The notes below the pieces were generated by a model. It was not told where the DNA came from, searched no databases, and saw only the letters and a list, made by a program, of their open reading frames with translations. Below, in pieces: positions 951 to 13,438 of a stretch of 32,070 bases of DNA. The position numbers and the translations under genes were made by a program. How positions within the stretch are numbered: the stretch's first letter is position 1; every line of letters starts with the position of its first letter. Source of the DNA: Bigelowiella natans CCMP2755 (taxonomy: Eukaryota > Protista > Cercozoa); the NCBI GenBank assembly GCA_000320545.1, contig ADNK01003347.1, positions 1 through 32,070 on the forward strand, given 5' to 3'.

Positions 951-3556
951 TAAACTATAGAATTGTTGTTATTACATCTTCTATGGCATGCATTTCTTTC
1001 AACGAAACTACAACCCTAATTCTCCCATCAACACCATCATCACCGTCACGACCACCTTCAGACGCCTGACAAGTCAGAGAGGGAGGGGAAGCGCTCTAAC
1101 GATGCTGCTGCTGCCGCCATCCCTCGGAAAGAGAAGACGAAGGCGAAGAGGATAGAAAAAACGGACAAGAAGAAACCGCACTTTCCAGCGCCCTCCGCAT
1201 CTTCATTTTCTTCATGTTGGATTGTCAAACCGGATTGCGGCGCGCAGGGGGATGGCATATACCTGGCCGAATCTATCGAAGATATTGAGCGACGCCGCCC
1301 CTCGGGCTCGACGTGCTACGTGGCGCAAGAGTATCTTTCCGACCCCCTTCTGATAAGCGGGTGCGTGCGTGAGGAAGAGGCGTTTGAGACGCGGTCGTGA
1401 GGGGAGGGTATCTTCTATGCTTGTTTGGTTTTTCCCAGCAGCGGCAGATACCTACTTCTGGATGGTGTTTGCTTTTCACTACTTATAGCAGCTTTTTCAG
1501 TCGTAAAGATGTTGTCTTCTGTAGCTTCTGACTATCGATCAGCCCTTGAAACTCTGAACCCCTCACCGCTCACTCCCCCCTCCTCCATCCCTTTTTCCTT
1601 CTGTTCCCCTCTCTCTCTCTCTCACGCTCTCTCTCTCTCTCTTTCGCTGCGGGATGTGTTGTGATAAATTGGGCAATTAGCTACAAGTTTGACCTACGTG
1701 TCTACGTGCTGGTGGCGTCCTTGAATCCCCTCGAGGCATATGTGCGTAAGGAGTGACAGTGATATATCCACCCCCCCCCCCCTCTCTATCTTCAATCTCT
1801 CCCTGAGTGCGTATGGGGGTGTGCGATAAACAATACCATGCTGAAAGCGGACTCGACAGATGACGACTAACACGCGCAGTGCTCGCAGGTATGCAAAGAA
1901 GGCCTTGGCCGCTTGAGCACCAAACAGTATCAGCCCCCAAACAAAGGTACGGTTGTTGCGCAAATAGTAGAGGTCATGCACGGAGGAGTCTTTCTGAGAG
2001 TCTGTGTAACACGTGCCTTCAGGAAACGTCGGTGTCAGCACCATGCACCTCACCAACTATAGTCTCAACAAGAGAAGCGAAGACTTCGTCCACGGGGAGG
2101 AGGGGAACAAACGGCTGCTCAGCGCTGTGCTGGACACGATAGCTGAAAAGGAGGCCAGCAATGGAGGATCTTTCAATGCTGAGTCAGGTTGTTTGCGCCC
2201 GCACCATCTGGCCGATTTCTCCGTGTGAGTCTATGCACGTTGCTAGAGGATCTCGAGCGCAGCTTTAGGAAAAAGCGCACCCATGCATCCACTCTGTTGT
2301 CATCGCTATCACCATCACCATCACCACCATCATCATCATCACCACCACCACCATTTTCATGTTTACTTATTTATCCTCCGGTGTTAGTATGGGCTGGGAT
2401 CTTATCGCTCGTTGGCGAGACATTGCGCGCAATCCGCCCTGTCCTGCTCGACGCCGCCGAAGACGCCGCGATGATCATCGAAGGAGACAGCTTGAAAGGG
2501 CGGCGAAGCCTGGCTGAAGGCATGGGCAGCGGCCGGTGCTTCCAGATTCTCGGATTCGACATCATGCTCGACCGACAGGGCAGGCCCCACTTAATAGAAG
2601 TCAACAACTCCCCGTCCATGAATGCTGAGGAGGTCTTGCCGCTAGCATCGCTGAAGACGAAGGAGAAAACGGAGATAAAAGCCGAGGGAGCAAAGCCGGC
2701 GTCGTCATCGACCTCCTTGCCGGCACCTTTGCACCCCAAGAAAAGCAGCGAGAACCCGCCTGCTTCTTCTCCTGATTTGGCGTCTTCGCGACCGTGGTAC
2801 ATGGAAGATCACGGCGTAGGCCCTCGCTGTGAGTGCAAAGAGTGTCTGGGTTGGCATGTTCACCGCATCTGCCCGGTTGACGTCACTGCTAAGAGGCGTG
2901 CGATGACTGGGGCGCTCGGATGTGTACTCAACCGCTGCCGGGCCATTTCTAACAAATCTGGGAAGAAGGCGAATGGCAGCCGCATTCTTGGAGAGGCGGT
3001 GGAAAAGTACTACTATCGAGTGGACGAGGACAGACGTGCAGAAGCGCTGTCTATTACACCAGGAAGCATCGATGGAGGGTGCGCCTATTCAGCCTCCTCA
3101 GCGCTCGAGCTAGTGCGCCAGCTGTTCGAGCATGTCGCTGGACGGCATCGTGCCCTCAATGCCTTCAAGTTTCGAAAAGCGCTGCAACTTGCTGGTATCC
3201 TTGCGAGCAGGCGAACTTCGACGAGGGGGGGGCGGAAGGAGGGGAAGGTGGCTGGGAATGACCACGTAGGACGAAATGAAACAGCACGAAACCAGCCCGA
3301 GAAGGCACCGGAGCCGGCGCCGAACGACGCAGATATGATTTCTTCAAAGCTGGTGCTGTTGCATCCGGACGATGTCGATGCGATGTTCAAGCGGGCACGG
3401 ATGAAGTCGGCCAGTGGATATGTGCAGTTTCCGGAGTTCACCGACCTCATCATCACAGCCATTGAGCAGGCTTGCAGAGATTTCAAAAAGGCTAGTGAGA
3501 GAGATGCGGCACGGAGAGCCTGCTTTGATGGCATTAAGGCGGCGATCCATCTCTAA
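60..3556 (+). CDS. Tubulin-tyrosine-ligase-like polyglutamylase, TTLL11-like (5' part outside window)
   Basis: Exons ~60-105, 250-339, 529-~780/795, 1062-1360, 1681-1741, 1889-1946, 2023-2187 and 2388-3556 join in phase at GT-AG. They give the TTL motifs FWPRTFILPDE, WIVKPDCGAQGDGIYL, VAQEYLSDPLLISGYKFDLRVYVLV, KEGLGR, MHLTNYSLNK and CFQILGFDIMLD..GRPHLIEVNNSPSM. The C-terminal CxC..HxH..VD and 'DVDAMF..F.EF' helical region resemble TTLL11. Confidence 0.9.
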
Positions 3557-6067: not shown

Positions 6068-6632
6068 TGTCACTCGTCGTCCGGATTGTGAGTTACTACT
6101 CTCGTCGTCAGCGGTTTGAAAAAAATGAGATGATTTTTAAAACAAATTGTGATGATTTCGATGCTGCGTCACATCCATAAGCTTGTCGCAGTCTAAATAA
6201 TGCCGAGCATTTTCAGGAAAAATCGAAGAAAAATCGACACATACACCCCTCAAGTTGTGTGTGCTTTGGTGATAAAAATCAATTCAATTTTTTTCAAGAA
6301 TCGTTGTTATGATCGATGTTCAATACAAATCTAAGAGGAAAAGCCACCCTCGTGACTCAAAACCCCCCCGCCCACCACCGCATCGCGAGCCAATGGGGTG
6401 CAACTCGAGAGGGTCACTCGAGTTTTTCACTAGAGCAAGTGAAAGAAACGAAGGACTGACTCACCCGTCTCTCAGGGGCTCCAAGTCCAACCTTTGGTGG
6501 GCCAAAGAAATCTTTCGACGGAAAAGCGCTCTCTTCTTGGTGCCCTTCCTGCGCAAAGGAGTTTCGCAAAATGATGAACAACTGATGAGCACAGAATGTT
6601 CCAACCCGACGTTTATTCGCGATAAACGTACA

Positions 6633-7092
6633 ATTGGATTGGTCCTAGATGTTTTTCCCCTGCATATTGATGATCTGTGACAAGACGTTTTATGAAGGAG
6701 GGTACCCGTAGCAACTTGTCATTGAAACGAATTTTGTTAGGAGCTAAAACTTTTCTTCAGTTATGAAACTGCGGGATTTATAGACAGTTTTTCGAGGATG
6801 AGGGTGGGTATTGTAGGGTTCATGGCTGAAATCGCATGAATTCCAGTTTTGCGTCAATGTCTCGACAAAACGGACAACGTTATGTTTCTCCAGACAAAAA
6901 GCTCCCCAAAACCCAAATGTGCACATGCATCTGGAACGTTCTAGCTTCGTACGAGTAGTGCACGATGAACGCAAGATTGGATTGGTTTTGGATGTATTCC
7001 CCCTGCATATTAATGATCTGTGACAAAAGACGTTTCGTCAAGGAGAGTGCTCGTAGCAACTTATAGAAACGAATTTTGTAAGGGGCTGAGCT
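6633..7092. repeat. Diverged ~115-bp direct repeat (6633-~6746 and 6976-~7092) in a divergent intergenic region
   Basis: attggattggtcctagatgtttttcccctgcatattgatgatctgtgacaagacgttt...cgtagcaactt...gaattttgt versus attggattggttttggatgtattccccctgcatattaatgatctgtgacaaaagacgttt...cgtagcaactt...gaattttgt. Confidence 0.85.
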
Positions 7093-7253
7093 AGACACCA
7101 TAACTCAAAACTACTCAAGTTCGCAGACAGCTCGCCAAGGTACGGCTTCGGCTTCGGCTCCCTAGCGTCCAGACTGCTATTCGTCGTGAGAAGATATAAT
7201 ATTGCTCACATTCCCCTTTGCGGAAGTAACGTTTTCATTTTTTGTCTCAGATC

Positions 7254-9585
7254 ATGGATTCACTCAAGCCAACTCAGCAGCAAATGACAATCGCTCGCAA
7301 GCGCCTTCCAATTTTCGAATTTCTGTCTGATGCCGATCTCAAGCAAGTCCTTTGCTTCTCGAGCCCATCTGAGGCTAATTCGTTTGGGCTCTTCCCCAAG
7401 ATCGCAACTTTTTCAACCGTGGTCGTCGATCCTGAGACTGAATCGATCATCGGGGTTAAGAACTGTGCTGGCAAAGCTGGTGAAGAGATGATATTTTTGA
7501 AGCCTATAAATACGAAAGGACGTCACCCACTTGATTGGATTTGTGACGTAATTGCCACGGTTCCCGTGGAGATGCGAGCCCAGTTTTTAGCTGCCTGGGA
7601 GGGTATGCAGAACCTGAAAGGTGAAAGGAACAAAAGCAGGGGATACAATTCGCAAGAGCTGTCCGAGTTTCCCGAACCAATTGTTCTATTGCTCCTACGA
7701 GTTAAGTTCACGCAGGATGTCGACGCAGCACTCCGCAGCGGCAAGCTCCAGTCTCTTCAGAGCTTGGATAAGTGCCTAATGCAGAGGATATTTCAGATCT
7801 CCATGACTGTGAGAGATCAAGCGAAGAAGATATCTCGAAAAGGATCGAGCATAATTACCTTGTTGTTTGGACAAGTACGGCAACTCAGAAAGCTAATCAA
7901 GTATGCTAAGATTTCCACTTACGTCGCGACTTGGGAATTTTGGAGGTCTCAGCTGCGTTATTATGTCAAAGCCAGTGGCAATGCCGCTAATATCGAGGAA
8001 AAGTACAACTCAAAGGAGAATTCGATCACGAAAACTATTCTAAGCGTTCGCTGCGGTGAATCTGTCGAAATTCCTTATGGCTTCCAATATGGCAGTCACA
8101 GAATGCTTGTGCAGACTGATCTTACCCATGAAGCTTACGCCACGGCGATGAGCGCTTTTGAGGCCGGAAAGAATAGACTGGTGGTAGTCAACGGGCCAGT
8201 GGGAACAGGGAAAATTGAGGTCTTGAAAGATCTGGCAAATGCGCTTGGCATCAACTGCTATCTGTACAAGCATTGTAGCAGCAGGAAAAGTGACCATTCG
8301 GCTTTAATTTTGGCTGTGAGTCGAAACCCGAACATGATGTTCTTGTTCGAAGGATTGGATAAAGAAGGTGCCGAGGTGATCCAGGCAATTACTTCTGCCA
8401 ACGATGAGAAAGATATTGCTACTCGTACTGGTCTTATTTGTGTTGTTGGAAACCTTGATAAAAAGGAAGTAAAAGAGTCGCTCGGAAGTCTCCCAGCTTG
8501 TGCAACTCAGATGATGACGACACCAGACCTTGTTCGTATATACGAGGTAATTGCCTCACAGTATAATCATTGATGTGTGGAATTGCTACAACACAAGCAT
8601 CAGCACTTAAATTTTACTTCTTTTTCAGTTTGAATTATGGCATTGATTTGTTGTTGTTTGTCATTTTGGCCAGGTGATGCTTGCTATCGAAGGATTCACC
8701 ACTCCCGAAACGGTTGCGGTTGAATTGAATAATTTCTTAGTAAAGGCCCGAGAAACTTTCTCCGAGAAATCTTGGTACGATTACGGTCTCCGCACTGCCA
8801 AGGTTCTCATTAAGACTGCTGGTGCATTTCTTCGATCTTCTAGATCAATTAAGGATGAAGCAGAGGCGAAAAAAGAACGGAAAGGTCTCCATGATGCCTT
8901 GTGCGCCTCAATCCTACCGTCCTTGGTTCCTGCGGATCTTACTTTGGCGTCTGGCCAGCTTCATGCACAATTCCCTACATTTCCACCATTTCCTTCGAAT
9001 AAAAACGACACGAGAGGCGTCGAAGAGCTGATGTCTATGCTATCAAAGTCGGATGCCAAGAAAATGACAAAGCTGAAAGGTGATGTAGGAACGAAGTTCA
9101 GTATGATCCAATTTTCAGTCATGTCCAAGATCCGTCACGGATTGCTTGCACTAAGCGATTCACCGAAGTACTTGCTACATGCACTCTCGACACTCGCATC
9201 ACTGGTTGGTGTCAATTTCTCACTGATCAACCACGACAATCTGACTACTGCTGAGCTCTACGGCGCCATGACGGAGGATGGGGAGTGGCAACGTGGAGTT
9301 CTTGCAGAACGCATGATGTCTGCTGCGAATAAAGACGGAGCTCCTACCTGGATCGTGTTGGAAGGTAAAATGGATCAAGTGAAGCTGCAACCACTCTATT
9401 CTATTCTTGACGACAACAGAAAGTTGTTCCAGGAAAATGGAAGTGTCGTTTCTTTGCCAAAAAACGCCAATGTGGTCCTGATCAGTACGCCTGATGAAGT
9501 TGCCAAGTGGAAACCTGCAGCTATATCGCGTGTGGGAGTCGTTCACTTTATCGATAATGAATCAGGCCGCTGTTCCGTGATGTGA
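7254..9585 (+). CDS. Truncated dynein heavy chain-like protein (linker C-terminal part + AAA1 + lid + AAA2), 734 aa, C-terminal CaaX (CSVM)
   Basis: Exons 7254-8546 and 8674-9585. The intron gtaatt...ggccag joins YE|VMLAIEGF. Dynein-like motifs: RKRLPIFEFLSDADL (cf. R..FPRFYFLSD.DL), FWRSQLRYY, YGFQYG..LVQTDLT, GPVGTGKIEVLKDLANALG, PDLVRIYEVML..EGF, YDYGLR, RHGL, ELYG...GEWQRGVL, WIVLEG.MD, ILDDNRKL..ENG, PAAISRVGVV. Probable 5'UTR intron at 7140-7250. Confidence 0.88.
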
Positions 9586-10027
9586 GCAAACGACAAATTA
9601 TCCAAAGAATGAAAACAGCAGTTACGACAAAAATGCTGTGTCGTTCGAGCATTCCATCGTTTGTTGTTGTGATGTCAAAATTGTAATCATGGAAATCAAT
9701 TTAAATAATAGACATAGTAATATCATATATAATATATATGGTTGTGCTAAACTGTGTACGCGAATAGATAAAGCCTTAATGGCAATATTAAAGTACAAAA
9801 ACGCGTAAATCTTAAGCATTAGCTTTATAATGAGAACTAGTTGGTGAAGCTGGCATGGTTTAAATCTGGTAGCATGGCTCAGATCCAGGCATATAGATTG
9901 TTATATAGCAACATCATCTTAGCCTCACAATATACCACATACATGTATATATACATACATATATGATGCAATCAATCATACGACTTCATCATCGCACCCT
10001 CTGCTTAATGATCGCTTTTCAAGAAAA

Positions 10028-10414
10028 ATGTCCTTTCCTTCAAAGAAGCGTCGAATGGAGCTTTCCTGTGACAACAAAGATTCACAGGACGTAAAAAAGC
10101 TTGAGCAGACAATTCTAGATCTTCAGGTGGAAAACAAAGACATGGAGAGAAGGATTGTGGATCTTGAGTTGGAAAACAAAGACATGGAGAAAAGGATCAT
10201 GGATTGTGAGTCCGAACAAAAACGTTTAGAGGAAGATTTGGAGAACAATGAGGCTCACATCAAACATCTTGAGAAACAAATCAATCCCAACAAACACAAA
10301 GAGACCGACGAAAAATCGGTGCAGGACAGCGACGAAAGCATTTGCTCTTTTCATTCATGGCGTCATGAAGACCTGTCCAGTGTCTTCTCTGATCAAATCA
10401 CAGACGGGAGTTGA
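10028..10414 (+). CDS. Small intronless coiled-coil protein with basic NLS-like N-terminus (possibly mutated relic)
   Basis: 128-aa ORF, PSKKRR at the N-terminus, duplicated heptad unit DLQVENKDMERRIV / DLELENKDMEKRIM, zero Tyr, TGA stop. Confidence 0.5.
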   Translation: MSFPSKKRRMELSCDNKDSQDVKKLEQTILDLQVENKDMERRIVDLELENKDMEKRIMDCESEQKRLEEDLENNEAHIKHLEKQINPNKHKETDEKSVQDSDESICSFHSWRHEDLSSVFSDQITDGS

Positions 10415-12050: not shown

Positions 12051-13438
12051 TTAATCCATGAGCAAGCCAGCTTCCTCTAAACTCTTTGTGATGATGATAT
12101 CCTGGCAGGTGTTGAAGACTACCGTCACATTTCCTGTGTCGGTGGCGTTTGTGATGTGGGTGTAGATCTGCTTGCGATTATTTTTGTTTTTATCGGTAAA
12201 CTTCTGCCGTATAAAGGCAGAAGCACTATCAAAGTCGTTGTCCCCGTCATAATCATCGAAACAGACGCTTAAATGCACGTGGGGTAGCTTCTCCAAGAAG
12301 AGGTCACTCTTGTTAAGGAACAAGATCATGTTTGTCCTGGTAAACCATTTTAAGTTGCAAATTTCCTGGAACAATCGCAGGGATTCATGCATCCTGTTCA
12401 CGCTTTTGTCTTCGTACAATATCTGGTCATACCCACTGATGCATGCATAGAGCAGAGGCCAAGCAAAACAGCAATTTCGTAAAGTTAGCACTCAGTACGA
12501 TTTGTTGACCAACGCATAGCAAACTAGTATGAAGTCTCCCTTCGGGCTCACTTCACTCCCGCCCGCCCCCTTTCTCTTTTATAAAATGGAGCTGACTAGT
12601 TCAAGTTTGCCTTACCTCAACGATATGACGAATATCACCGCAGTTACATTCTGGAAGAGATGTATCCATTTCTCTCGCTCTAAAACCAATAAATAATATC
12701 CGTTATGACAGATACAGGTCACTCCCCCATCAGGGAGAGCCCCACCCTTTGCCACCCCAATCTCCGCATGAATTTGAAACAACATTTGGAAATTATCGTA
12801 GCTAAATGTATTGGAAGATAGCGCGCCCACCGTTTCGTTGACCCCCGACGTCGAAGAGCCTAAATTGATACTTCTTGTGCACGTACGTATGCTCTAATAT
12901 CCCGGTGGTTCTCACACGAGACCTGAAAACGTCCTGCAGACTTGGGATGTAGTCGGGCTTCCAAGTCTGATCTAGCCTCCCGAAGAAGTACTCCGCCGAA
13001 TCCGCCAGGGAAAAGCGGCCGCGGAACTTGAGCGTGTGCCTTATATTCTTATCTGCCCAAATTATCTTCATTTTTCTGCAGATGTCCTCGGTCAGTACGT
13101 CGTCAAGGGGCCGCAGCTTGAGGATGTCCTCTTTGCACTGGATGGCCTTCTTGTCCGTCATTTTACATTTCGCAAGCTCGTTAATTTTATCTGCACCTTG
13201 ATTTCCTGTATTTTCTCCATAGAAATCGGATGCACGGCACAAGTCTTGCATGGCTAATATAGTGTTGGAATGGATAATCGCTTTGTACAACTTCCGCTCC
13301 TCTGGAGGGAAGCCCTTGCCGTGCATGGAAACCATCTGCTTGTAAAGGGTGCTCTTTCCGCTCTCCCCAGCTCCGAGAAGTAGTAGTGTGTGTACATTAG
13401 ACTTCTTTTTACTTTCCCTGTGAGAATATTTTCATTAG

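What the first reader, a model, noticed from the sequence alone, without database searches (positions are those of the whole stretch)
7254..9585. 'Mini-dynein': linker-AAA1-AAA2 only, degenerate ATPase motifs, ending in a CaaX prenylation signal
Seen: an intact spliced 734-aa frame covering only the distal linker, AAA1 and AAA2, stopping right after the AAA2 arginine-finger strand with ..ESGRCSVM*. There is no room for a tail upstream (opposite-strand gene ~1.2 kb away, in-frame stop at 7101) and no AAA3-6 or stalk downstream. AAA1 Walker A is GPVGTGKI (canonical GKT), Walker B FDEFNR has become FEGLDK and the AAA2 P-loop is gone. Sensor II (DYGLR) and the Arg finger (SR) persist. Known: dynein heavy chains are >4000 aa with six AAA domains, AAA1/AAA2 form the main ATP site, and CaaX ending in Met is a typical farnesyltransferase substrate. 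Inference: a repurposed membrane-anchored nucleotide-binding pseudo-ATPase or scaffold rather than a pseudogene, since it is highly diverged yet has no stops or frameshifts.
Basis: partly seen in the sequence, partly recalled or inferred. Interest (0 to 1): 0.82.

Follow-up and report, generated by a model that had tools for sequence, protein, structure and literature searches.

The report
Conserved mini-dynein, catalytically dead here
This alga (Bigelowiella natans) expresses a real 734-residue protein made of only the first third of a dynein motor, and it belongs to a previously unnoticed family of such "mini-dyneins" found in several groups of marine protists. So a piece of the dynein engine appears to have a working life outside the six-part ring.

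Summary
The window is Bigelowiella natans contig C390. The gene is exon 7254-8546, a 127-nt GT..AG intron, then exon 8674-9585. It encodes the 734-aa public protein P0001 (JGI Bigna1 91721).

Transcript assemblies of three studies laid on the window, plus four held public transcript contigs (these sets may overlap), give one mRNA. It starts at about 6918 and has a further 111-nt intron in the 5'UTR. In-frame stops precede the ATG, and poly(A) is added at about 9705-9746. Nothing splices onward.

The predicted structure (pLDDT 86) superposes on yeast dynein residues 1517-2230 (Z 40). That span is the C-terminal part of the linker, AAA1, and the AAA2 large lobe up to its arginine-finger strand.

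The gene is not an orphan or a pseudogene. At least 15 short homologues share the same C-terminal end, and those complete at the N-terminus mostly share the same start. They come from Noctiluca, Chattonella, Scyphosphaera and uncultured protists. All lack the AAA2 P-loop, and the 15 that cover AAA1 lack its pre-sensor-I hairpin. The 14 with complete cores form one clade (100/96) apart from all full heavy chains.

Most members keep canonical AAA1 motifs. B. natans has lost four catalytic residues and is probably a pseudo-ATPase. Its CSVM ending is specific to this species, so farnesylation is plausible but untested. This scan had not noted the family on other DNA.

The parts
6918..7139 (+). First, non-coding exon (5'UTR). 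The mRNA 5' ends cluster at 6918-6928.
   Evidence: Transcript contigs start at 6918, 6923, 6924, 6926 and 6928. Several in-frame stops are present, including TAA at 7101.
7140..7250 (+). 5'UTR intron, 111 nt, GT..AG. It is retained in one transcript assembly (L011).
   Evidence: Spliced out in L012, L013, L014 and in contigs of runs X1, X3, X6. Retained in L011.
7254..8039 (+). Residues 1-262: the C-terminal part of the dynein linker. The conserved 'LPIFEFLSDADL' motif begins 17 residues after Met1.
   Evidence: phmmer aligns residues 14-336 to human DYNC1H1 1622-1928. VIA aligns model 1-734 to yeast Dyn1 1517-2230. Pfam DHC_N2 does not detect this region in this protein but does in 3 of 17 family members.
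8040..8513 (+). Residues 263-420: AAA1 large lobe. It is degenerate and lacks the pre-sensor-I hairpin.
   Evidence: Pfam AAA_6. AF2 strands and helices. The spacer from Walker B to sensor I is 23 aa, against 43 aa in full heavy chains.
8193..8216 (+). AAA1 Walker A, GPVGTGKI (canonical GPAGTGKT).
   Evidence: Alignments.
8337..8363 (+). AAA1 Walker B position, MFLFEGLDK (canonical CFDEFNR). Asp is replaced by Glu and the catalytic Glu by Gly.
   Evidence: Alignments.
8433..8453 (+). AAA1 sensor I strand, LICVVGN (canonical TMNPGY). The sensor Asn is lost.
   Evidence: Alignments.
8547..8673 (+). Coding intron, 127 nt, GT..AG, phase 0.
   Evidence: joint 8544/8672 in contigs of three studies.
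8776..8793 (+). AAA1 lid sensor II motif, YDYGLR. The D, G and R are invariant across the family.
9076..9561 (+). Residues 566-727: AAA2 large lobe only, with no lid. It keeps its H2 and pre-sensor-I hairpins.
   Evidence: phmmer aligns residues 419-725 to human 2039-2366. Pfam AAA_5 is weak. AF2 strands 628-630/636-638 and 681-683/689-691.
9136..9180 (+). Position of the AAA2 P-loop, replaced by HGLLALSDSPKYLLH (canonical HG..VG..G.GK[ST]).
   Evidence: The P-loop is lost in all 15 family members covering this position.
9514..9537 (+). AAA2 arginine-finger motif, PAAISRVG, followed by the last core strand.
9571..9585 (+). C-terminal CSVM (CaaX-type ending) plus the TGA stop. It sits on a disordered tail.
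   Evidence: pLDDT is below 50 for residues 728-734. The ending is absent from all homologues.
9586..9746 (+). 3'UTR, with poly(A) addition at about 9705-9710 and about 9734-9746.
   Evidence: Poly(A) loose ends at 9705 in raw RNA reads of X23. Contig ends fall at 9701, 9710, 9734 and 9746.

Best explanation
What is shown. Window 6918-9746 (+) is a single-copy, expressed B. natans gene. Its 734-aa product is a stand-alone fragment of a dynein motor. It consists of the C-terminal part of the linker, the whole AAA1 module (large lobe and lid), and the AAA2 large lobe, ending a few residues after the AAA2 arginine-finger strand. It belongs to an old, conserved 'mini-dynein' family of about 500-820 aa. 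Family members occur in a chlorarachniophyte, a dinoflagellate, a raphidophyte, a haptophyte and uncultured marine protists. They share the C-terminal end and, where the N-terminus is complete, mostly the same start. All that cover the relevant position lack the AAA2 P-loop and the AAA1 pre-sensor-I hairpin.

What is inferred for the family. These proteins contain exactly the parts that build dynein's main ATP site: the AAA1 pocket, the AAA1 lid sensor II, and the AAA2 arginine finger in trans. The typical member is therefore most likely a one-site, two-lobed AAA+ 'clamshell'. Its AAA1/AAA2 gap would open and close with ATP, without any ring, stalk or tail.

What is inferred for B. natans. Four catalytic positions are lost: Walker A Thr to Ile, Walker B Asp to Glu and Glu to Gly, and sensor I Asn to Val. 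The P-loop lysine, sensor II and the arginine finger remain. This copy most likely cannot hydrolyse ATP. It probably acts as a fixed-state scaffold or adaptor that binds whatever the family normally binds.

What is speculative. The flexible tail ends in CSVM. This is a plausible farnesyltransferase substrate that could tether the protein to a membrane or a partner. The motif is specific to this species and is unproven.
For: Gene model. Identical public transcripts carry both introns spliced, upstream in-frame stops and poly(A) tails.

Identity. P0001 is JGI Bigna1 91721 / EukProt B. natans.

Homology and fold. AAA_6 scores 100.7 bits. phmmer against solved dyneins gives E 1e-29 and is collinear from linker to AAA2. 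The AF2 model has pLDDT 86.4 and pTM 0.88. Foldseek gives TM 0.82 and VIA gives Z 40.1.

Family. Seven short homologues score 134-248 bits, above every full heavy chain (at most 133 bits). In a careful maximum-likelihood tree, the 14 mini-dyneins fall on one side of a branch with support 100/96, and in 100% of bootstrap trees (quick tree). A genomic contig of another organism (L023) ends the gene at ...SRLGIVRLPK followed by a stop, with opposite-strand ORFs next to it.

Constraint. The coding sequence is less diverged than the UTRs among strains (7/2205 against 5/323, p=0.012). dN/dS is about 0.29.

Copy number and partners. The gene is single copy, and no orphan C-terminal dynein half exists. 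The 12 loci with AAA_6 are the same 12 contigs that carry AAA_8.
Against: No biochemical data exist for any family member, so the clamshell mechanism is inferred from dynein structures.

Walker A Lys and the Gly pattern survive, so nucleotide binding by the B. natans protein cannot be excluded.

The strain comparison has only 8 coding differences. dN/dS alone is not significant (p=0.085).

The mini-dynein branches are 3-7 times longer than those of full heavy chains. Their position outside all classes could therefore be long-branch attraction.

CaaX is absent from all homologues, and no close orthologue from another chlorarachniophyte was found. Prenyltransferase beta-repeat hits in the genome do not distinguish farnesyltransferase from the geranylgeranyltransferases.
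Confidence: 0.65

Rival explanations
1. The protein is a soluble decoy or regulator. It is not lipidated, and the CSVM ending is fortuitous. It works in the cytosol or flagellum by mimicking the linker/AAA1/AAA2 surface of full dyneins, for example by binding a dynein assembly or regulatory factor.
For: CaaX is absent from all homologues. Two subfamily members end immediately after the last strand (..NFMM..NFAA). By composition alone, a CaaX-like ending has a chance of about 1e-3 per protein, which is not negligible across a proteome. Every named organism with the family is one I recall as having a flagellate stage (my knowledge).
Against: The tail is disordered and exposed. CSVM matches the classical farnesyl pattern closely. 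Other members also carry hydrophobic or targeting additions at the same spot: a ..SWFW ending and a PB1 domain.
Confidence: 0.25
2. The B. natans protein is still an active ATPase. It would use Glu at the Walker B Asp position and compensating residues.
For: Walker A Lys, the glycine pattern, sensor II Arg and the AAA2 Arg finger are all kept. The family's ancestral state is catalytically intact.
Against: Four catalytic positions changed at once: the Mg-binding Thr, both Walker B acids and the sensor I Asn. Similar parallel decay in Noctiluca and P0153 suggests that hydrolysis is dispensable.
Confidence: 0.07
3. The locus is a pseudogene or decaying relic of a partial heavy-chain duplication, transcribed but functionless.
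For: The protein is only 21-24% identical to the full heavy-chain segments aligned here, and its catalytic motifs are degenerate.
Against: The 734-codon frame is intact (chance about 1e-18). Splicing and polyadenylation are correct in transcript assemblies of at least three separate studies. The coding sequence is more conserved than the UTRs. Homologues at 23-35% identity share its C-terminal end, and most complete ones its start, across several eukaryote groups.
Confidence: 0.02
4. It is the first piece of a split or trans-spliced dynein gene, or an assembly artefact. The rest of the motor would be encoded elsewhere.
For: Split, trans-spliced dynein heavy-chain genes are known in Giardia (my knowledge, not checked here).
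Against: The mRNA has a stop codon, a 3'UTR and poly(A). It has no tail-coding exon. Every AAA_8-bearing locus sits on a contig that also has its own AAA_6, 12 of 12. A genomic copy in another organism ends at the same place.
Confidence: 0.01

Closest known systems
Canonical dynein heavy chains (cytoplasmic, IFT and axonemal)
   Same: The linker C-terminal part, AAA1 and the AAA2 large lobe are homologous and collinear. The fold superposes at Z 40. Sensor II, the AAA2 Arg finger and the AAA2 hairpin inserts are kept.
   Different: There is no tail and no first part of the linker (about 150 residues on yeast numbering). The AAA2 lid, AAA3-6, stalk/microtubule-binding domain and C-terminal domain are all missing. 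The AAA2 P-loop and the AAA1 pre-sensor-I hairpin are lost. Length is about 700 aa instead of more than 4000. In B. natans the AAA1 catalytic residues are also lost.
'Orphan' and new dynein classes of Kollmar 2016 (PMC5100056)
   Same: They are divergent, taxonomically patchy dynein relatives that fall outside the nine classical classes.
   Different: According to that paper, those orphans keep full motor domains and tails alignable to known classes. No class of short linker-AAA1-AAA2 proteins is described there.
Other dynein-like AAA+ giants (midasin/Rea1, RNF213)
   Same: They have concatenated AAA+ modules on one chain, with some degenerate sites.
   Different: Those have six-module rings. 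The protein here matches dynein AAA1 and AAA2 specifically (Pfam AAA_6) and carries a dynein linker.
Farnesylated CaaX proteins such as prelamin A (CSIM), Ras and the dynein adaptor Spindly (PMC4436830, PMC4384735)
   Same: The C-terminal Cys-x-aliphatic-Met lies on a flexible tail. For Spindly, farnesyl serves as a handle for binding a protein partner, not only a membrane.
   Different: Only the motif is seen here. It is not conserved in homologues, and no modification has been shown.

Membership tests
Dynein heavy chain (canonical) | AAA1 module homologous to Pfam AAA_6 above the curated cut-off | tested here: met
   100.7 bits against a cut-off of 25.2. All 17 family members match.
Dynein heavy chain (canonical) | Six AAA+ modules on one chain forming a ring (AAA3-6 present) | tested here: not met
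   The protein ends after the last core strand of AAA2. The mRNA ends at about 9705-9746. The contig has no AAA_8 hit.
Dynein heavy chain (canonical) | N-terminal tail and complete linker | tested here: not met
   The protein starts at the equivalent of yeast residue 1517 or human residue 1613. The TSS is at about 6918, with in-frame stops before the ATG. There is no DHC_N2 hit on the contig.
Dynein heavy chain (canonical) | Coiled-coil stalk with a microtubule-binding domain | tested here: not met
   No sequence exists beyond the AAA2 large lobe.
Dynein heavy chain (canonical) | Catalytic AAA1 site (GPAGTGKT, DE of Walker B, sensor I Asn) | tested here: not met
   B. natans has GKI, FEGLDK and CVVGN. 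Eleven of the other 15 members tabulated keep the Walker A Thr, both Walker B acids and the sensor I Asn.
Mini-dynein family (defined here) | Starts 6-20 residues before the linker motif 'P.F.F.SD.DL' and ends 2-19 residues after the AAA2 'SRxG' motif | tested here: met
   B. natans starts 17 residues before the motif and ends 15 after. Exceptions are the Noctiluca N-terminal extension, the C-terminal PB1 domain of P0051, and P0108, P0051 and P0143, which begin later in the linker or, in P0143, with other sequence.
Mini-dynein family (defined here) | AAA2 P-loop lost | tested here: met
   Lost in all 15 members covering the position. Present in the four full heavy chains aligned.
Mini-dynein family (defined here) | AAA1 spacer from Walker B to sensor I shortened (pre-sensor-I hairpin lost) | tested here: met
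   23 aa in B. natans and 19-36 aa in the family, against 43 aa in full heavy chains.
Mini-dynein family (defined here) | Groups with the other members in a tree that includes full heavy chains | tested here: met
   Support is 100/96, and the clade appears in 100% of bootstrap trees and at 98 in the quick tree. Long branches are a caveat.
CaaX farnesylated proteins | C-terminal Cys, then a1, an aliphatic a2, and X = Met, Ser, Gln, Ala or Cys, on an accessible tail | tested here: met
   CSVM. The tail pLDDT is below 50.
CaaX farnesylated proteins | Motif conserved in orthologues | tested here: not met
   None of 15 homologues has a Cys at position -4. Only near-identical B. natans strains share it.
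CaaX farnesylated proteins | Farnesyltransferase present in the organism | tested here: inconclusive
   Prenyltransferase beta repeats (PF00432) occur at 4 loci, but the type cannot be told from exon fragments.
CaaX farnesylated proteins | Covalent farnesylation of the protein | not testable with these tools
   Needs labelling or mass spectrometry.

The most novel reading that the evidence does not exclude
Mini-dyneins are an ancient, widespread class of ring-less dynein-derived AAA+ proteins. They would be a self-contained AAA1/AAA2 nucleotide switch with a linker stub. Lineage-specific C-terminal tags (farnesyl in B. natans, a ..SWFW ending, a PB1 domain) would send it to different sites. 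This would be the first natural case of a dynein ATP site working outside a six-module ring, and a ready-made minimal system for studying dynein's main catalytic site.
Probability: 0.45. Interest if true: 0.88.

Novelty: new variant of a known kind. Interest (0 to 1): 0.78.

Why it matters
Dynein motors are always described as six AAA+ modules on one giant chain. The AAA1/AAA2 interface is treated as a site that has meaning only inside that ring.

Here a conserved, expressed family keeps just that interface plus the adjoining linker part, in several distant protist groups. This suggests the module has an independent cellular function.

It offers a natural protein of about 70 kDa for biochemical and structural work on dynein's main ATP site.

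It gives a clean evolutionary series from motif-intact members to pseudo-enzymes: B. natans, Noctiluca and one uncultured lineage.

It also warns annotators that short 'dynein fragments' in protist transcriptomes are not all assembly debris.

Tried and rejected
Searches that gave nothing useful:
- NCBIfam gave nothing.
- Pfam DHC_N2 does not see the linker part of this protein. Homology there rests on phmmer and structure.
- The word-index search with exon 1 found only the gene's own cluster.
- The word-index search with the family alignment was saturated by ordinary dynein fragments and was wasted.
- The word-index search with P0153 added one member, P0169.
- The ESM Atlas searches by features and by shape returned only clusters of animal heavy-chain fragments, which says nothing about the family.
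- Earlier scan notes held nothing on this locus.
- Four paper searches and a reading of Kollmar 2016 found no description of such a family. This is not proof that none exists.

Candidates set aside:
- P0147 was considered as a member and rejected. It has a second P-loop, so it is an ordinary heavy-chain fragment.
- P0015 and P0040 are divergent but continue past AAA2, so they were not counted.

Handling of the spliced model. Searches with window sequence were made exon by exon. I submitted no joined model to any search. All later full-length searches used the public record P0001 that one search returned. In local scripts the two exons were concatenated only to compare them with the public transcripts and to count sites.

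Full report
**Where we are**

The window is the whole of contig C390 of a 91-Mb assembly. The protein encoded at the finding is letter-for-letter the public protein P0001. This record is listed as JGI Bigna1 model 91721 and as EukProt Bigelowiella natans P007497, and it also occurs in MMETSP transcriptomes. The organism is therefore the chlorarachniophyte alga B. natans (Rhizaria).

**Gene model**

Two ORFs, 7242-8573 and 8674-9585, lie in different frames. The sequence shows GAG|GTAATT at 8546/8547 and CCAG|GTGATG at 8673/8674.

A 2685-nt public transcript (L011) maps at 100% identity to 6926-8546 and 8674-9734, then ends in A's. Three further transcripts (L012-L014) show the same coding intron. 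They come from other strains or samples and differ from the window at 3-7 of 2205 coding bases. They also splice out a 111-nt GT..AG intron at 7140-7250 in the 5'UTR, which L011 retains.

Laying public runs on 6300-10400 gave the same picture. Contigs from three separate studies carry both joints and run from 6918-6976 to 9701-9746. Raw RNA reads show poly(A) tails starting at 9705. No read or contig joins to anything downstream.

The spliced and the unspliced 5'UTR both carry in-frame stops before the ATG at 7254.

The final model has these parts:
- a non-coding first exon at about 6918-7139;
- an intron at 7140-7250;
- coding sequence at 7254-8546 and 8674-9585;
- a 3'UTR running to about 9705-9746.

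The product is 734 aa.

**What the protein is**

Pfam finds the dynein AAA1 family AAA_6 at 100.7 bits (cut-off 25.2), a weak AAA_5 match in the last 120 residues, and nothing in residues 1-290.

phmmer against solved structures gives E about 1e-29 to many dynein heavy chains. The match is collinear. Residues 14-336 align with human cytoplasmic dynein 1622-1928, running from the linker motif FPRFYFVGDEDL to the AAA1 P-loop. Residues 419-725 align with 2039-2366, running from the AAA1 lid to the AAA2 'SRCG' strand.

An AlphaFold2 model was built on an alignment of 17 family members and 16 heavy-chain segments. It has mean pLDDT 86.4 and pTM 0.88. Only loops and the last seven residues are of low confidence. 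Foldseek matches it over its full length to dynein motor domains, with TM 0.82 to 9bma. The second aligner gives Z 40.1 and rmsd 3.1 A over 660 residues. Model residues 1-734 correspond to yeast Dyn1 1517-2230, human 1613-2378 and Dictyostelium 1680-2430.

From my knowledge of the yeast motor (linker roughly 1364-1770), this span is:
- the C-terminal part of the linker (about 250 residues);
- all of AAA1 (large lobe and lid);
- the AAA2 large lobe, up to and including its last core strand.

The AAA2 lid and everything after it are absent.

**Motifs in the B. natans protein**

| Position | B. natans | Canonical |
|---|---|---|
| AAA1 Walker A | GPVGTGKI | GPAGTGKT |
| AAA1 Walker B | MFLFEGLDK | CFDEFNR |
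| AAA1 sensor I strand | LICVVGN | TMNPGY |
| AAA1 sensor II | YDYGLR (kept) | YDFGLR |
| AAA2 P-loop | HGLLALSDSPKYLLH (lost) | HG..VG..G.GK[ST] |
| AAA2 arginine finger | PAAISRVG (kept) | PATVSRCG |

**It is not an orphan**

The exhaustive profile-free search of 1.84 billion representatives returned seven short proteins above every full-length heavy chain. They score 134-248 bits, against at most 133 bits for full chains. Further short ones appear lower in the list.

I inspected the sequences and their sources. Members include:
- Noctiluca scintillans, a dinoflagellate (823 aa);
- Chattonella subsalsa, a raphidophyte (619-653 aa);
- Scyphosphaera apsteinii, a haptophyte (510 aa);
- about a dozen sequences from marine metatranscriptomes and metagenomes (504-711 aa).

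Shared features:
1. Seven of the members complete at the N-terminus begin 6-20 residues before the linker motif. Noctiluca has an extra N-terminal region of about 150 aa. P0108 and P0051 begin later in the linker, and P0143 opens with unrelated sequence.
2. They stop 2-19 residues after the AAA2 SRxG motif. One member, P0051, instead continues into a PB1 domain (Pfam E 1e-9).
3. All 15 covering the position lack the AAA2 P-loop.
4. In all 15 homologues covering AAA1, the spacer from Walker B to sensor I is 19-36 aa, against 43 aa in full heavy chains. This removes the AAA1 pre-sensor-I hairpin. The AF2 model shows that the corresponding hairpins of AAA2 are kept.

Two trees were built on the AAA1-AAA2 core. 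The first had 83 rows. The second was a careful run of 49 rows under LG+C20 PMSF. In both, the 14 mini-dyneins with a complete core fall on one side of a branch. Support is SH-aLRT 98 in the first, and ultrafast bootstrap 100 with SH-aLRT 96 in the second, where the clade appears in 100% of bootstrap trees. B. natans lies in a seven-member subclade (100/96) with Chattonella, Noctiluca and a group ending in ..SWFW.

The mini-dynein branches are very long, 1-3.8 changes per site against a median of 0.5-0.6. Their position outside all classical classes therefore cannot be trusted. The shared indels and shared ends are independent support for a single origin.

The two AAA modules match dynein AAA1 and AAA2 specifically. 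The family is therefore a truncated derivative of a full heavy chain, not a precursor of one.

A genomic metagenome contig from a GC-rich organism (L023) carries a multi-exon member. Its last exon ends ...SRLGIVRLPK followed by a stop, and opposite-strand ORFs follow. The short architecture is thus confirmed on DNA in a second organism.

**Functional state**

Eleven of the other 15 members tabulated keep the Walker A Thr, both Walker B acids and the sensor I Asn, and all 15 keep the sensor II Arg. Together with the AAA2 arginine finger, these are all the elements of dynein's main ATP site. That site lies between AAA1 and AAA2 (established structural knowledge).

The family's ancestral state is therefore most simply a one-site ATPase. 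Its two lobes would close on ATP, with a linker stub and the AAA2 hairpins that talk to the linker in full dyneins. This mechanism is an inference. Nothing was measured.

B. natans has lost four catalytic residues. Two other lineages show parallel decay:
- Noctiluca has GKV and VMDNFQL.
- The uncultured P0153 has GKA and FEYSNH.

Hydrolysis seems dispensable for at least part of the family's role, which points to a scaffold or adaptor activity in those lineages.

**Is the B. natans copy under selection?**

- It is single copy.
- The frame is intact, with a probability of about 1e-18 by composition.
- Among strains the coding sequence differs less than the UTRs (7/2205 against 5/323, Fisher p=0.012).
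- There are four synonymous and four non-synonymous sites in all. This gives dN/dS of about 0.29, which is not significant alone (p=0.085).
- The strongest evidence is conservation of architecture at 23-35% identity across several eukaryote groups.

**Split-gene rival**

The genome has 12 loci with full AAA_6 matches. The same 12 contigs carry AAA_8 (the AAA4 module). Contig C390 has neither AAA_8 nor DHC_N2. No orphan C-terminal half exists to pair with this gene.

**The CaaX ending**

CSVM fits the classical farnesyl pattern and sits on a disordered tail. It is kept in three near-identical B. natans sequences, which carries no weight. No homologue has a Cys at position -4. By composition, such an ending has a chance of about 1e-3. 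The genome has prenyltransferase beta repeats, but I could not tell which enzyme they belong to.

The C-terminus is where family members differ:
- nothing added in some;
- ..SWFW in six sequences;
- a PB1 domain in one;
- possibly a C2-domain ORF 440 nt downstream in L025.

A lineage-specific targeting tag at this position is plausible. Farnesyl could also serve as a handle for binding a protein partner, as in the dynein adaptor Spindly (PMC4436830, PMC4384735). I put prenylation at roughly one in three to one in two.

**Novelty**

Kollmar's 2016 survey of 3,272 dyneins reports that its orphans keep full motors and tails alignable to known classes. It excluded fragments from its trees, and no short class is described. 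Full-text searches for truncated, short or mini dyneins found nothing relevant. Within the limits of that library, the family appears undescribed. I rate it a new variant of a known kind: a new, conserved architecture within the dynein heavy-chain superfamily.

**Verdict**

'Not a pseudogene' and 'pseudo-ATPase' hold up. 'Membrane-anchored' is unproven and not conserved.
- The larger result is the family itself.

Window sequence was searched exon by exon, and I submitted no joined model to any search. Full-length searches used the public record P0001.

Noticed in passing
window 7140-7250: The 111-nt 5'UTR intron is retained in one MMETSP assembly (L011). It is spliced out in three other transcripts and in contigs of three studies. 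Its length is a multiple of three, so the frame of the upstream stops is unchanged.
   Followed up: yes
window 9705-9746: Short separate RNA contigs and minus-strand reads cover only 9709-9739, carry G instead of T at 9723, and run on into unrelated AT-rich sequence. This may be the end of a convergent transcript, a second locus or a hairpin artefact.
   Followed up: no
window 2189-3553 (+) and 12802-13332 (-): Neighbouring ORFs match a tubulin-tyrosine-ligase-like ATP-grasp fragment (Pfam TTL, E 6e-8) and a G-protein alpha subunit (E 7e-35). The TTL-like gene is another microtubule-related gene on the same 32-kb contig, but no link was tested.
   Followed up: no
L025 562-2076 and 2517-2870: This metagenomic family member (P0059/P0165) has seven in-frame TAG codons read as sense and ends at TAA. 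That suggests an organism with a reassigned TAG. A C2-domain ORF lies 440 nt downstream on the same strand in another frame, so it is either a separate gene or a further exon.
   Followed up: partly
P0051 residues ~560-657; P0154 residues 1-150: One family member carries a C-terminal PB1 domain (Pfam E 1e-9). The Noctiluca member has an N-terminal extension of about 150 aa. Six members (P0004/P0153, P0005, P0006, P0008, P0010, P0169) end in a conserved ..(S/G)W(F/W)W motif.
   Followed up: partly
G000 contigs C1777, C1365, C1203, C2723, C3471, C558, C3677, C1146, C3611, C3288, C3117, C3324: B. natans has 12 loci with full dynein AAA1 modules, each on a contig that also carries AAA4. Several have open frames of 3000-4500 codons around the match, so they have few introns there. 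C3324 is broken into many small exons.
   Followed up: partly
P0040 (2894 aa) and P0015 (1009 aa): These two divergent long-branch dynein relatives sit between the mini-dynein clade and the classical heavy chains in both trees. P0040 has only about 420 residues before AAA1, so it may be a tail-less dynein.
   Followed up: no
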